Positions 1,583 through 9,470 of a DNA stretch of 64,000 nt are shown piece by piece (position 1 is the first letter of the stretch; each line of letters starts with the position of its first letter). Position numbers and translations under genes: made by a program. Source of the DNA: Bugula neritina. Its lineage: Eukaryota > Animalia > Bryozoa. The notes under the pieces are model-generated. The model saw only the letters and a list, made by a program, of their open reading frames with translations, was not told the DNA's origin and searched no databases. The stretch covers positions 19,389,700-19,453,699 of the forward strand of contig OZ037768.1 of the NCBI GenBank assembly GCA_964035545.1, read 5' to 3'.

Positions 1583-2300
1583 AGTCTACAGTCTACAGTC
1601 TACACCAATGCTTTTCTGTGCAATGTCGCAGCTATGAAGATTTTATCTCCTATAGACAATGAGAATGCATTTAGCATTTTCTGCTTTTCTTGGGATAATA
1701 ATTGGTTGAAATTACTAAAATAATTTATTTACCTTCATTAATACAGTTTATGACCTTAACCTTAACCTTTGTACTAAAAAATTAGCACGTAGAGTTCTTC
1801 ATCTCACCATTCAAATGCTTCAAGATGTCTATTTCGGCATGTTTATCAGAAAAACGTCTGCATGCATGCAAGGTGTACCCTCACAACAAACATTAAAGTA
1901 GTTCTCATTCCAATTTAATGTTGGTCACAAGAAATAAACAAAAAGTAGTAACTATAATTTACACATTTTACTCTGCTAATGCAAAGTTTATTAATTTGTT
2001 GTAAGCTTTTTCAGCATTTGACGTTTTAGTTAAGCTGAAGTTGTTACTTGACTATTCAAATTTATTGCAAAACATATTTTGTCATTTTTTACAATTGTTT
2101 AAAGCTGTGACTACTCTGCGCTTTCACCACTGTAAATCTATACGTCAATAAAAGTCAGAAACCTTTTCATTTTCCCTCTTTCATTAAAACCTTTTTATTG
2201 AAACTTTGCATAAGTGATTTTATTGCGCAAATGTTTTCTATTTCTCAACAAAACACAGATATTTTTATATGAGTAGTAAAAGTACTTTTTTTCTATATAT

Positions 2301-5300
2301 CATCATCATCATCATTATCATCTTGCCGATTGTCGTGTCCGACTATGACTTCTGGTGTATCATTAGTCTCTATCTGGGTCTTTCAAGTGACAGCATTTGC
2401 CATTTACCGAGATATATCCCCTTGTCTTTAAGGTTGCGTTTAATGGTATATTTGTAACGGAGACTCGGTCTGCCAATGTCACGGGAGCTTTTTTGTTAGC
2501 TGTGAGTATAGAACTTGTTTTGGGATCCTGGTGTTGTTTAATCTGTTGATATGTTCGACCCATCTTAGATTTCTTTGGATGAGGGTGTCATATAAACTGG
2601 TAATGTTGGTTTTCTAAAGGATCTTCATATTGGATACAAAGTGCCACCATTTCACTGACAATATCTGTCTTAGCTGATTCATAAGAAAGGCATTCAGCTT
2701 GTGTGCCTTGATTTTATAGACTGTCCATGACTCCACTCCATATAGCAGTGTAGATAGAACAATGGCTTGGTAGACTGCACATTTTGTCTTGGTTGTCAGG
2801 TCTCCGTTATCCCAAACCCTTTCTCGTAGCCTTCCGAAAGTTTGTGATGCTTTTGACATTCTCAACGGGAGTTCTTGATCAAGTTTGTTGTTGTTTGTGA
2901 TGATTGAGCCAAGATATTTAAAGTTCTTGACTGTGTTGAGGATTTCTCCATCTATACTGATCTTTTTTCCCTCATCATGTTTTCCTGGTGGTGGTTGATA
3001 CATCATTTCTGTTTTGGTTATATTTATCTTCAGTCCAAAGTCTTTGGCAGATTTTGCGAAACGGGTGATGACTTTTTGAGCCTGCTGATGGTAGTAGGCA
3101 ACAAAGGCAGTGTCATCAGCAAACATGAGTTCTCTGATGAGTACCTTTCTTGTTCTGGTGGAAGATTTGAACTAATTGACATTGAACAAGTCAGCGCCAG
3201 GTCTTGATTGAATCCATACACTCTTATCATAGCCATCAAAAGCATGGTTCATAACCATAGTGAGATAGATAGAGAACAGGGTCAGAGCTAGCACGCAGCC
3301 TTGTCTTACACCGTTTGTGATCTCGAATGGTGCTGGGAGATCTCCTTTCAGGTTGACAGAGGCTTTCATTCCTGTATGTAGGGCTGCAATCAGGTTAGTG
3401 AACTGGTCTGGGCAGCCAAGCTTTCTTAAAACCATCCACAATGTCGATCGGTTTACTGTGTCAAATGCCTTTGTGAAATCAACAAAGATCATGTATAGAG
3501 GCATATTCTGTTCTATGCATTTTTCCTGAATCTGTCTTAGTGAGAATATCATGTCTGAGGTGCCTCTACCTGCTCGAAAACCGCACTGAGTTTTTGGGAG
3601 AAACTGTTCTACATGTTGTGTAAGTCTATTGAGTAATATACGGGCAAATACCTTCCCCGGGATAGAGAGTAGTGAGATGCTACGGTAATTTCCGCAAATG
3701 CGCCTGTCTCCTTTCTTGAAGATCGTGACTAGCTGTGCATCTTTCCAATCTTGTGGTACCTCTTCGTTTCTCCATGACTCTGTGATGAGTTCAGTAAGCC
3801 TCAGTATAAGCTCTGCACCACCTTTCTTCAACAGCTCAGGATGAATACCATCAACTCCTGGTGACTTCCTGTCAGAGAGCGCATTTACACCTCTCATAAT
3901 CTCTGTGACATCGAGAAATTCATTTATCTATTTTTGGGTTGGCTGCTGGTGTATGTGACTGGTGATGTCAGGGTTCGCATTTCCTGTTTTATTTAGGAGT
4001 GTTTGGAAGTGCTCTGTCCATCTCTGCATCAAACCATCTATCTGGGTGAGGAGGGTGTGGCTGCACTTGTCAAATAGTTGGTCTGGGTGGTTTACACGTG
4101 GACCCCAGACTGCCCTCATGTTTTTGTAGAAGCTTCTCATGTCATTTCGGTTAGCCAGTTCCTGCAGTTCAGCTGCCTTGTCTTGCCACCATTTTTTCTT
4201 TAGTTCACGGCATTTCTTTTGAAGTGTTCTGTTACATTCCTTGTACTTTCTTTTGGTTTTCCTGGTCGATCGGTTCATGACAGCAGAACGTGCTAGGTTC
4301 CTCTCACTTAATAGGTCTTGTAGTTCTATAGAGTGTTCATCAAACCAGTCCTCGTGTTTTCTGCCAACAGTGCCTAGCTTCTCCTTCGAAGTTTCATAAA
4401 CTGTGTTCTTAAAGTTTTTGCATGCGTCGTCAAGTGTTCCAGGTGTTCTCAAGCTCAGTTTCTCACTTAGTGCTGTTTTCAAGTCATCAAGTATTTTCTT
4501 ATCTTTCAATTTGTTGGCGTTGAGCTTTTTACTTGTTTGTTTGAACTTCTTCATTTTTCTTTTGATGATGAGGCTAGTGCGTGATTTTATCATGATATGG
4601 TCTGTGTTGCAGTCTGCCCCACGCATTGCTCTGGTGTCGTGTATGTCCTTCAAATCACGTTGACGGGTGATGACATAGTCAATCAGGTGCCAATGCTTGG
4701 ATCGGGAGTGCATCCATTAGTTCTTGTGGGCTGGCTTATGTTTGAAAAAGGTGTTGGTGATTGCAAGTTGAAATTGGTTGCAAAGGTTCAGAAGACGTTC
4801 ACCATTAGCATTGATTTTTCCAGAGCCGTGCATTCCTATGACATTTTTCCAGGTAAAAGAGTCGTCACCTACGCAAGCATTAAAATCACCCATAAAGATG
4901 ATTTTGTCAGAGATATGGATATCCCTCAGCGTCTGGTTGAGCTGGTCATAAAAGCTATCAATACTTCCAGTAGTATTGGTTATTGTTGGGGCATAGATTG
5001 TTACAATGATACAGTAACGGTCATGTTTCAGTGGTAGTCTCAATGTCATAATTCTGTCATTTACAGGTTTAGGATCCTCGCAAAGTTTTGATGTGATGTT
5101 GTTACTGATGGCTAGTCCTACGCCTGATTCGCTCTTCTCTGATGATGGTTTCCCACTCCAGTAGATAGTATATCCACTCTCCTCACGTATACAACCGATC
5201 TCAGCAAATCGTACTTCACTCAATGCAGCAATGTCTATTAGGTAGTTTGACAGCACCTTTGATATAATGGCGCTTCTTCTTTCTGGTCGTTCAGCGTATA

Positions 5301-5820
5301 AACGGTCTAGCATGGTTCTGATGTTTCATGATGCTAGGTTAAGTTTATTATGGGGTTGGACCTTTTTATCCTGGGCGACGTCTGGCCAGTATAAGTATTC
5401 TTTCTTGTGTGACTTCATGATACAACATGTGCTGGCAGGAATTTGTGAGGCTACTGTGTGGTTTGCCAGTTGGCACAGCAGCCCTCTCCACTATGCAGTG
5501 TCAATTAAGCTGGCAAGGATGATCCAAGATGAGCTCAGACTCTGAGTAGTCGCAGTGACCGGCCGGATATAGTTCAGCGAGTGAAGAATAACCGCCCTTG
5601 CAGGATGTCAAAAGCCTGTCTTTTTTGTCTGGGTGTAGCTCCCATAGATCTCTGAGCCGTTAGCCTGGTAGAACCAGTTACCAGTGCTAACCACGTGGAG
5701 GTGCCTCAGAGTCTTGATGATTGGTGACTTTGCCAGTTAGTACTGGCACTTCGTCGCCTCAGCATCCTTATTGTGTCTTCCTCCACTTTAGTAAGCTTAG
5801 CAGACATCCACCATCACCAG
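2301..5820 (-). mobile_element. Full-length, decayed RTE-clade non-LTR retrotransposon (APE endonuclease + RT)
   Basis: ORF fragments 4717-5313 (RPERRSAII..DIAALSEVR, GDFNA), 3928-4713 (HLIDYVI, TDH), 3172-3897 (KSPGVDGI, QCGFR, FVDFTKAFD, GVRQG), 2614-3126 (FADD, FKYLGS) broken by stops/frameshifts; (GAT)n 3' tail at 2301-2322; 16-bp TSD with one mismatch at 2285-2300 and 5821-5836. Confidence 0.93.
5646..5766 (-). ncRNA. HDV-like (nested double pseudoknot) self-cleaving ribozyme in the RTE 5' UTR
   Basis: Minus strand: P1 GAUGCUG(5766-5760)/UAGCACU(5689-5683); P2 CUCUGAGGC(5711-5703)/GGCUCAGAG(5658-5650); P3 ACC/GGU closing L3 UCCACGU(5699-5693); P1.1 GG(5682-5681); P4 CUGGU-UCU-ACCAG; J4/2 GCUAAC with candidate catalytic C at 5663. 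Confidence 0.82.
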
Positions 5821-5903
5821 CTTTTTTTATATATATGCCAATATTAACTTGTGTCTATAAAGTAGAAGATCTGTTGCCAGTTGGTATGTAATATGCTTCT
5901 TAA

Positions 5904-8516: not shown

Positions 8517-9086
8517 AAACACAAGTAATGCAGTTTGAATGCAGCATAAACTTGAGTTGGTAATTAGTAATAAAGAAAAAATTTGAAAATATTATTCAAA
8601 TGCTGTAAATTAAACTATAAATTAGTGCACATGAAATAACACAACTATAAACATAAAAGCTACAGTCATTACTATATGAACTTAACAAAGCAACTATACC
8701 AATAAATATAATTGATGTTTGATATACACTCTATGGACTATAACACATGATTAATATAAGCTTTTACTTGAATGGTAAGCTAAAGCTTTATAAATTTTAC
8801 AATAGTTTATTGGATCTTAATTATTATACAAATGGAGTGACATGAAAGTATTGTTCTATTAATCTGGAAATCATCAAAGATATAAAATAAATTGTAAAAT
8901 TTTTTAACATAACAGAAACAATAAATTGTGAACAATTTAATAGGTCACTAATTTCAGCAGCATATATTCATTTATTATAAAATAGTGCAAAAAAATTAAG
9001 CCGATTAGGATCTAATAAAAAGCTTAATTTTAATAAAAAGCTTTGCTGTAAGATTTCAAAATTGATTTAATAGTTTAAAATTATTG

Positions 9087-9470
9087 TTGAAGAAAATAAA
9101 CTTGAACGGATTTTTGTAGTTTTGGTTTCTGAGCAACGATGAAGTACTAATTCAGCATTGCTCAGCAACCAAAACCACAAAAATCCGTTCAAGTGTATTT
9201 TCTTCAAAATCTTATATGAAGAAATTATTTTTAAATTTGCTTTAACTGCTAATGTGTGCGCTTATACCAAAATATCTATCACCTAAATGAACAATTGTGT
9301 AGCATAATTTGAATTCTAAGTAGCAGACAAACTTTAAACTTTTAATGAGTTTGCTCTTTATACAAAGGTTCAACCTATTCACTTTGGGAGGGCACGACTC
9401 TCATTGTAAAGGAGATATTGGAGCCCATTGAAAAGGGTCTATTAATCTTATGAACTTATAAGCCAGCACA
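9087..9470. repeat. Interspersed repeat containing a ~120-bp hairpin (9087-9207)
   Basis: ttgaagaaaataaacttgaacggatttttgt...acaaaaatccgttcaagtgtattttcttcaa is an inverted repeat; the hairpin and the downstream ttgggag...gggtctatt block recur at 27381-27600. Confidence 0.75.

What the first reader, a model, noticed from the sequence alone, without database searches (positions are those of the whole stretch)
5646..5766. HDV-like self-cleaving ribozyme at the 5' end of the RTE LINE
Seen: on the minus strand every element of the HDV fold occurs in the correct order: P1, a J1/2 hairpin (GGCGAC..UGCCAG/CUGGCA..GUCACC), P2, P3 with loop UCCACGU, the P1.1 GG, a perfect 5-bp P4, and J4/2 GCUAAC. There is one mismatch in P1 (A-C) and one in P2 (G-G), consistent with decay of this copy. 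Established: HDV-like ribozymes process the 5' ends of R2, L1Tc and some RTE retrotransposons. Inference: this is a member of an RTE-borne ribozyme family in this lineage. The predicted cut (5' of 5766) lies ~54 nt inside the TSD-defined 5' end (5820), so this copy either came from an uncleaved transcript or gained extra 5' sequence.
Basis: partly seen in the sequence, partly recalled or inferred. Interest (0 to 1): 0.8.

Follow-up and report, generated by a model that had tools for sequence, protein, structure and literature searches.

The report
Decayed HDV-like ribozyme heading RTE LINE
The stretch is a worn-out copy of a hepatitis-delta-type self-cutting RNA at the front of an RTE-type jumping gene; the predicted cut is at the element's first bases (5819/5818), not at 5766, and the mechanism is already known for this class of elements.

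Summary
The catalytic core (P2, P3, L3, P1.1, P4, J4/2 with C5663) is real. It recurs at the 5' end of four diverged subfamilies of a 3.5-kb APE+RT LINE in this genome. P2 covaries strongly: 6 of 12 pairs change on both sides, 92.8% of cells pair against 52% or less for slid controls. The best Rfam hits are HDV-like models, below threshold.

It pairs well only here and in L004, where P1' is mutated (here CACCACU to UAGCACU), and such a site turns up in 57% of shuffles. In the other subfamilies it is the base of a J1/2 hairpin. The real P1 5' strand is the element's first seven bases, GGUGGUG (5818-5812 here). It pairs 7/7 with CACCACU in subfamilies A, B and C.

In the young subfamily B, target-site duplications place the element start exactly on G1. 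Two metagenomic relatives carry compensatory P1 changes. No copy starts at 5766.

This copy is dead: one P1 mismatch and a broken ORF. Cleavage was not tested. The scan already reported the same ribozyme on the young family elsewhere in this genome. It is a new member of a known kind.

The parts
5821..5836 (-). 5' target-site duplication (ATATATATAAAAAAAG)
   Evidence: Matches 2300-2285 at 15 of 16 positions.
2301..5820 (-). Decayed RTE-type LINE copy of subfamily A. APE fragment 5313-4717; RT fragments 3897-3172 and 3126-2614; (TGA)n tail 2320-2301.
   Evidence: Pfam Exo_endo_phos and RVT_1 on the ORF fragments. 65.6% identity to the young subfamily B over 3.3 kb. 84% identity to the intact relative L091.
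5812..5818 (-). P1 5' strand, GGUGAUG (GGUGGUG in the other copies). Predicted cleavage is 5' of G5818.
   Evidence: Pairs 6/7 with 5689-5683 in this copy and 7/7 in the A, B and C copies. TSDs of subfamily B put the element start on G1. P1 covaries in L102 and L107.
5770..5811 (-). J1/2 hairpin a. Its base is decayed in this copy.
   Evidence: MFE folds of A, B and C copies each give a hairpin directly after P1.
5716..5766 (-). J1/2 hairpin b. GAUG 5766-5763 pairs with CAUC 5719-5716.
   Evidence: MFE fold. A hairpin of different sequence sits at the same place in B and C.
5703..5714 (-). P2 5' strand: C5711-C5703, plus a 3-bp extension A5714-A5712.
   Evidence: Six of 12 pairs show changes on both sides across subfamilies.
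5690..5702 (-). P3 (ACC/GGU) enclosing L3 UCCACGU. C5698 and C5697 pair with the P1.1 GG.
   Evidence: Conserved in all subfamilies. Subfamily A's majority core ACCUCCUCGUGGU is identical to the drz-agam-1 consensus ACCUCCuCGuGGU printed. This copy has A for U at one L3 position.
5683..5689 (-). P1 3' strand, UAGCACU. It is mutated from the family's CACCACU at two positions.
   Evidence: Alignments; table.
5681..5682 (-). P1.1 GG
   Evidence: Conserved; 90.9% of cells paired with the L3 CC.
5665..5677 (-). P4: CUGGU-UCU-ACCAG
   Evidence: 97.9% of cells paired. The closing pair changes U-A, A-U, G-C among subfamilies.
5659..5664 (-). J4/2 GCUAAC, with the presumed catalytic C5663
   Evidence: GGCUAA is kept in the A, B and C copies of the table and in the relatives L091, L102 and L107. 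It matches the J4/2 of the Rfam HDV-like consensus lines.
5646..5658 (-). P2 3' strand: G5658-G5650, A5649 bulged, extension U5648-U5646.
2285..2300 (-). 3' target-site duplication

Best explanation
Window 5818-5646 (minus strand, 173 nt) is a decayed copy of an HDV-like self-cleaving ribozyme. The ribozyme forms the first 170-185 nt of an RTE-type (APE+RT, 3.5 kb, microsatellite-tailed) LINE family.

Inferred fold:
- P1 is the element's first seven bases (GGUGGUG, with G1.U) paired with CACCACU directly after P3.
- A J1/2 insert of about 100 nt forms two hairpins.
- Then come P2 (9-12 bp), P3 ACC/GGU, L3 UCCNNGY, P1.1 GG/CC, P4, and J4/2 GCUAA with the catalytic C (C5663 here).

Inferred mechanism, by analogy with R2, L1Tc and RTE ribozymes. 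The element is transcribed as part of a longer RNA. The ribozyme cuts 5' of G1. This frees an element RNA with an exact 5' end that still carries the whole ribozyme. Target-primed reverse transcription copies it to that end, so new insertions start at G1.

Shown here: the conserved core, covariation in P2, P4 and P1, and coincidence of the predicted cut with the TSD-defined element start. Inferred: catalysis, co-transcription, and any role in translation.

The window copy has one P1 mismatch (A5814xG5687), an L3 change and a broken ORF. It is a relic.
For: 1. Core models R1 and R2 find the core only at 5' ends of this LINE. Hits: 7 subfamily-A copies, 12 subfamily-B copies with identical cores, and decayed C and D copies.
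2. Pair counts: 92.8% of cells paired against 26-52% for slid partners. Eight pairs change on both sides, six of them in P2. Covariation score is 0.355 against 0.169 for shuffles, reached by 0 of 500 shuffles.
3. The terminal GGUGGUG pairs 7/7 with P1' in A, B and C. Shuffles put a 7/7 site at nt 1 with P = 1e-4.
4. Subfamily-B TSDs (CAGAATTTAACT, CAGTATGTT, CAGTGTAAT, TGACA) abut G1 exactly. Three copies lack only G1.
5. Relatives from metagenomes:
   - L091: 84% identity, intact 1031-aa ORF, intact ribozyme.
   - L102: RTE-like protein, 30% identity over about 1000 aa, E = 5e-138, with P1 GUUGGUU / AACCAAC.
   - L107: P1 GGUUGGU / GCCAACC.
   The last two give compensatory changes in P1.
6. 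The best Rfam hit of subfamily A is HDV-F-prausnitzii (15.6 bits). For subfamily B it is drz-agam-1 (23.1 bits, E = 0.012). Both align P3, L3, P4 and J4/2.
7. The generic core pattern gives 19 hits in this genome against 0 for the reversed control. In metagenomes, 56 of 83 hits also have a 7/7 P1 and a P2 of at least 4 bp.
8. Long J1/2 loops (216-498 nt) and cleavage at the element's 5' junction are documented for R2, R4, L1 and RTE ribozymes (PMC3774820).
Against: - No cleavage assay was done.
- P1 is invariant within this genome. Its covariation rests on two single-copy metagenomic relatives whose element boundaries are unknown.
- Rfam scores are below the gathering thresholds. The long J1/2 removes the P1 5' strand from the models' reach.
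- The public runs gave only assembled contigs. These stop 15-45 nt short of the 5' end and cannot show RNA ends.
- An exact 5' end could also come from a fixed transcription start.
Confidence: 0.85

Rival explanations
1. P1 is 5766-5760 with 5689-5683, the cut is 5' of G5766, and the 54 nt upstream are uncleaved leader.
For: In this one copy the pairing is 6/7. L004 also reaches 7/7, through its own mutations.
Against: P1' is mutated in this copy. With the family's CACCACU the pairing is 5/7 in most A copies, 2/7 in B and 3-5/7 in C. Sites this good occur in 57% of shuffles. GAUG 5766-5763 forms the base of a hairpin with CAUC 5719-5716. No copy starts at 5766. Six of the seven family-A copies that retain this region, the window's among them, begin at 5816-5820, and the seventh is rearranged there.
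Confidence: 0.04
2. The conserved pseudoknotted fold is a non-catalytic 5' UTR structure, for example a binding site for the element's protein or a translation-initiation structure. The exact 5' end is set by a transcription start.
For: Catalysis is untested. R2 ribozyme folds are reported to bind R2 protein and to support translation (PMC6765202). An exact 5' end is also what an internal promoter would give.
Against: The nucleotides kept invariant are those needed for catalysis: the J4/2 C, the L3 U...G, the P1.1 GG/CC, and the G1.U base of P1. The same core signature marks canonical compact HDV-like folds in metagenomes.
Confidence: 0.08
3. Chance resemblance with no functional RNA structure.
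For: Rfam hits are below threshold.
Against: Covariation across subfamilies that are 65% identical overall. The reversed-pattern control gives 0 hits against 19. The terminal P1 has P = 1e-4.
Confidence: 0.01

Closest known systems
HDV-like ribozymes at the 5' ends of RTE and other non-LTR retrotransposons (Ruminski et al. 2011, as cited in PMC3774820 and PMC6765202; Rfam drz-agam-1, RF01787)
   Same: Double-pseudoknot order P1-P2-P3-P1'-P1.1-P4-P2'. Subfamily A's majority core ACCUCCUCGUGGU is identical to the drz-agam-1 consensus printed. CUAA in J4/2. The ribozyme sits at the element's 5' end, and the predicted cut is at the element's first base.
   Different: A J1/2 insert of about 100 nt with two hairpins, so Rfam models score only 15-23 bits. 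P1 is made from a terminal (GGU)n repeat. Activity is not tested here. The original paper was not available to read.
R2 retrotransposon ribozymes (Eickbush and Eickbush; PMC3774820)
   Same: Large J1/2 loops: 216-498 nt in silkmoths, where part of the loop is needed for activity. Conserved P1.1, P3 and L3. Processing of a co-transcript.
   Different: R2 is site-specific in 28S rDNA and carries a different endonuclease. In most species R2 cleavage lies upstream in 28S. Here the element is dispersed, has an APE endonuclease, and the cut coincides with the element start.
L1Tc ribozyme of Trypanosoma cruzi (PMC6765202)
   Same: An HDV-like ribozyme in the first bases of a dispersed APE-type LINE. 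It releases the element from longer transcripts.
   Different: L1Tc's ribozyme is compact (77 nt) and belongs to a different LINE clade.

Membership tests
HDV-like self-cleaving ribozyme | Nested double pseudoknot, in the order P1, P2, P3, P1', P1.1, P4, P2' | tested here: met
   All helices are in order in A, B, C, L091, L102 and L107. 92.8% of cells are paired, against 52% or less for slid controls.
HDV-like self-cleaving ribozyme | Helices supported by compensatory changes | tested here: met
   P2: six pairs change on both sides. P4: one pair. P1: 2-3 changes on both sides against L102 and L107. P3 and P1.1 are nearly invariant.
HDV-like self-cleaving ribozyme | Catalytic C in J4/2 | tested here: met
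   GCUAA(N) is conserved. The C is kept in the copies examined, and also in decayed D (GGCCAA).
HDV-like self-cleaving ribozyme | 7-nt L3 with a leading U, CC for P1.1, and a G at position 6; G.U at the base of a 7-bp P1 | tested here: met
   L3 is UCCNNGY in A, B and C. P1 is G1.U in A and B, and G1-C in L030, L102 and L107. The feature list itself is from my own knowledge of HDV ribozymes.
HDV-like self-cleaving ribozyme | Scores above the Rfam gathering threshold for an HDV-like family | tested here: not met
   15.6 bits against GA 44 (RF02682). 23.1 bits against GA 37 (RF01787). The models cannot span a 100-nt J1/2, so the P1 5' strand does not contribute.
HDV-like self-cleaving ribozyme | Mg2+-dependent self-cleavage 5' of G1, giving a 5'-OH | not testable with these tools
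   Only an indirect indication: TSD-defined element starts fall on G1.
RTE clade of non-LTR retrotransposons | A single ORF of about 1000 aa with an N-terminal APE endonuclease and an RT; element of about 3.3-3.5 kb | tested here: met
   The B element is 3.49 kb. L091 has a 1031-aa ORF with Exo_endo_phos and RVT_1.
RTE clade of non-LTR retrotransposons | Short 3' end finishing in short tandem repeats instead of poly(A) | tested here: met
   (TGA)n or (TGAA)n tails in B copies and in the window copy. The criterion is from my own knowledge (Malik and Eickbush 1998).
RTE clade of non-LTR retrotransposons | RT phylogeny groups it with named RTE elements | not tested
   No tree was built against reference RTE, CR1 or L2 sequences. 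'RTE-type' therefore rests on architecture alone.

The most novel reading that the evidence does not exclude
The roughly 100-nt J1/2 insert, always two hairpins but with different sequences in each subfamily, may be a functional module that this ribozyme lineage needs for folding or for binding the element's protein. That would resemble the 35-nt J1/2 segment required in silkmoth R2. Building P1 from a terminal (GGU)n repeat may let the cut site slip by whole repeats and seed GGT microsatellites. One copy carries (GGT)112 at exactly this position.
Probability: 0.25. Interest if true: 0.5.

Novelty: new member of a known kind. Interest (0 to 1): 0.35.

Why it matters
It adds a well-supported, multi-subfamily example of ribozyme-defined 5' ends in RTE-type LINEs. 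It has a young, probably active subfamily (12 copies with identical cores) and an intact relative that could be assayed directly.

It also shows a pitfall. In a decayed copy, a mutated P1' can pair by chance with an internal 7-mer and shift the apparent cut site by 52 nt (5766 against 5818). Only comparison across copies reveals the true P1.

The mechanism itself is established, and the scan had already reported it in this genome. The value here is mainly in annotation and method.

Tried and rejected
- **Rfam.** A 12-kb scan at E up to 10 gave no HDV hit. Only narrow scans gave sub-threshold HDV-like hits.
- **Public reads.** All runs that hold the element are kept as assembled contigs. Their kind (RNA or DNA) is only guessed. 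Contigs end 15-45 nt inside the 5' end and none enters the flank of L017. With 12 near-identical copies, this cannot separate cleavage from an assembly break. No conclusion on expression or on RNA ends.
- **Ruminski et al. 2011 and Webb and Luptak 2011.** Not held in the library. What is known about RTE ribozymes is cited through PMC3774820 and PMC6765202.
- **MAFFT alignments of whole ribozymes.** These misaligned the 5' repeat and P4. P1 was counted with a script anchored on the core instead.
- **Pile-up of 5' ends at 5766.** None found.
- **Large protein search, structure prediction and complex prediction.** Not used, because the proteins are not in question.
- **Organism.** Not identified. 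Other notes of the scan mention cadherin and HELLS introns, so it is an animal.

Full report
**Observation.**
- P1: G5766-G5760 with U5689-U5683, with A5765xC5684.
- P2: C5711-C5703 with G5658-G5650, with G5704xG5657.
- P3: 5702-5700 with 5692-5690.
- L3: UCCACGU.
- P1.1: G5682 G5681.
- P4: 5677-5673 with 5669-5665.
- J4/2: GCUAAC, with C5663.

The stretch folds well: -50 kcal/mol, z = -4.7. In that fold, GAUG 5766-5763 pairs with CAUC 5719-5716 as the base of a hairpin.

Rfam gave nothing in a 12-kb scan. In a 231-nt scan the best hit of 4227 families was HDV-F-prausnitzii (15.6 bits, E = 1, below threshold). It aligned P3, L3, P4 and J4/2.

**Setting.** Downstream on the same strand lie fragments of an APE endonuclease (5313-4717) and a reverse transcriptase (3897-3172, 3126-2614). 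The element ends in a (TGA)n tail at 2320-2301. It is flanked by a 16-nt target-site duplication, 5836-5821 and 2300-2285, with one mismatch. The ORF is broken into at least four pieces, so this copy is dead.

**Other copies of the same subfamily (A).** The genome (216 Mb) holds six to seven other copies of this 5' region, at 88-94% identity. Every copy that retains the 5' region starts at window position 5816-5820. None starts at 5766.

In all the others except L004 (CACCAUU), the seven bases after P3 read CACCACU. Here they read UAGCACU. The element's first seven bases, GGUGGUG, pair 7/7 starting with G.U. In the window these bases are 5818-5812 (GGUGAUG), and they pair 6/7 with the mutated P1'.

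The G-G in P2 is present in all A copies, so it is a family trait and not decay.

**Diverged subfamilies.** A covariance model of the core (P2, P3, P4) was searched over the whole genome. Besides subfamily A it found:
- Subfamily B: 12 copies with identical cores.
- Subfamilies C and D: decayed copies.

A and B are only 65.6% identical over 3.3 kb. All subfamilies keep P3 ACC/GGU, L3 UCCNNGY, P1' CACCACU, P1.1 GG and J4/2 GCUAA.

P2 is rewritten: CUCUGAGGC / GGCUCAGGG in A, CUUCAUACU / AGUAUGAGG in B, with further changes in C and D.

Pair counts on the model-fitted alignment:
- 92.8% of cells are paired, against 26-52% when partners are slid.
- Eight pairs change on both sides, six of them in P2.
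- Covariation score 0.355 against 0.169 for shuffles, reached by 0 of 500 shuffles.
- This alignment leans towards the structure. The slid control and the plain sequence comparison give the same answer.

The subfamily-B core's best Rfam hit is drz-agam-1, an HDV-like ribozyme (23.1 bits, E = 0.012). Its consensus ACCUCCuCGuGGU equals subfamily A's majority sequence.

**P1 and the cut site.** Subfamily B is a 3.49-kb element with copies 98-99.5% identical.

Its target-site duplications abut the first G of GGTGGTGGTGGATGG in four copies: CAGAATTTAACT, CAGTATGTT, CAGTGTAAT and TGACA. Three copies lack only that G. So the first seven bases of the element are the perfect partner of P1'.

In the 106 nt upstream of P2, only nt 1 and nt 4 (the repeat register) pair 7/7. 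Shuffles give any 7/7 site in 1.8% of cases, and one at nt 1 in 0.01%.

In the window itself, four upstream 7-mers pair at least 6/7 with the mutated P1', and 57% of shuffles contain such a site.

**J1/2.** Between P1 and P2 lie about 100 nt. In A, B and C they fold into two hairpins of unrelated sequence, separated by AA and followed by UCAAGA and P2. Long J1/2 loops (216-498 nt) are documented for R2 ribozymes, and part of one is needed for activity (PMC3774820).

**Relatives outside the genome.** A generic core pattern (ACCTCC NN G N GGT N7 GG N AAC ... GGCTAA) gives 19 hits in this genome and none for its reversed control. It gives at least 120 stretches in public metagenome contigs. Of 83 hits examined, 56 also have a 7/7 P1 partner and a P2 of at least 4 bp, mostly in the compact canonical arrangement. 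The signature is therefore a good marker of true HDV-like folds.

Three hits are relatives of this family:
- L091: 84% identical to the window element over 3.49 kb, with an intact 1031-aa APE+RT ORF and an intact ribozyme.
- L102: a 994-aa APE+RT protein, 30% identical over its length (E = 5e-138). It has the same UCAAG-P2 frame and P1 GUUGGUU / AACCAAC.
- L107: the same CCAAGACUCU...GGGAUCU frame, with P1 GGUUGGU / GCCAACC.

Compared with GGUGGUG / CACCACU, these carry two to three compensatory changes in P1. The element boundaries of L102 and L107 are unknown, because each is a single contig.

**RNA evidence.** All public runs that hold the element are stored as contigs of guessed kind. Contigs cover subfamily B to within 15-45 nt of its 5' end and do not enter the flank of L017. 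This cannot show RNA ends.

**Mechanism.** By analogy with R2, L1Tc and RTE ribozymes (PMC6765202, PMC3774820), the element is read as part of a longer transcript. The ribozyme cuts 5' of G1 using the J4/2 C. The freed RNA keeps the whole ribozyme and is copied to its exact end.
- Shown here: fold, covariation, conserved catalytic positions, and coincidence of the cut site with the element start.
- Inferred: catalysis and co-transcription.

**Comparison and novelty.** HDV-like ribozymes at RTE 5' ends, cutting at the element's first base, are known. An earlier follow-up of this scan (s1-442905) reached the same conclusion on the young family at another place in this genome. I reached it independently and tested it here. 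This finding is a new, decayed member of a known kind.

What the report adds:
- The corrected P1 and cut site for this copy.
- Covariation across subfamilies and across samples.
- The two-hairpin J1/2.

Noticed in passing
L002:1746-2214 (G000:C9, about 590524-590992): In one subfamily-A copy the terminal (GGT)3 that forms P1 is expanded to a perfect (GGT)112 (337 bp). Directly upstream lies (TA)65.
   Followed up: partly
L021 / L039 (G000:C3, about 21377900-21377960): A subfamily-B copy has an inverted duplicate of about its first 23 nt between the TSD and G1. It looks like a snap-back of the cDNA at the RNA 5' end.
   Followed up: no
L007 / L008 (G000:C2:28036332-28036597): A subfamily-A copy has its first ~105 nt inverted relative to the rest. 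The breakpoint falls at about window 5715-5726, resembling a twin-priming inversion.
   Followed up: no
L018 and L020 (G000:C2:21834583; C3:5825826): Two subfamily-B copies are 5'-truncated at the same base. Both start at ACCAAGAGC, about nt 20 of the element.
   Followed up: no
L172, L173, L175 (G000:C3:20011406, 20039578, 21378593): A second HDV-like core in this genome: ACCTCCTNGTGGT GAGAGTC GG.AAC ... GGCTAA, with a covarying P4. No complementary P1 strand was found within 220 nt upstream. L173 and L175 share about 100 nt upstream of the core.
   Followed up: partly
L036:3303-3305 (copy L017, G000:C2): This young subfamily-B copy has a single in-frame stop inside the APE domain, in an otherwise open ORF of about 1030 aa. 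Other copies were not checked.
   Followed up: no
L017:1750-1850: The flank of this copy is a repeated sequence (91-95% direct repeats in L036). In one run guessed to be RNA it has very high summed contig depth.
   Followed up: no
window 9084-9210: A long near-perfect hairpin gives sub-threshold matches to several plant and animal miRNA-precursor models on both strands (best MIR5998, 66 bits against GA 180). It is probably a MITE-like inverted repeat.
   Followed up: no
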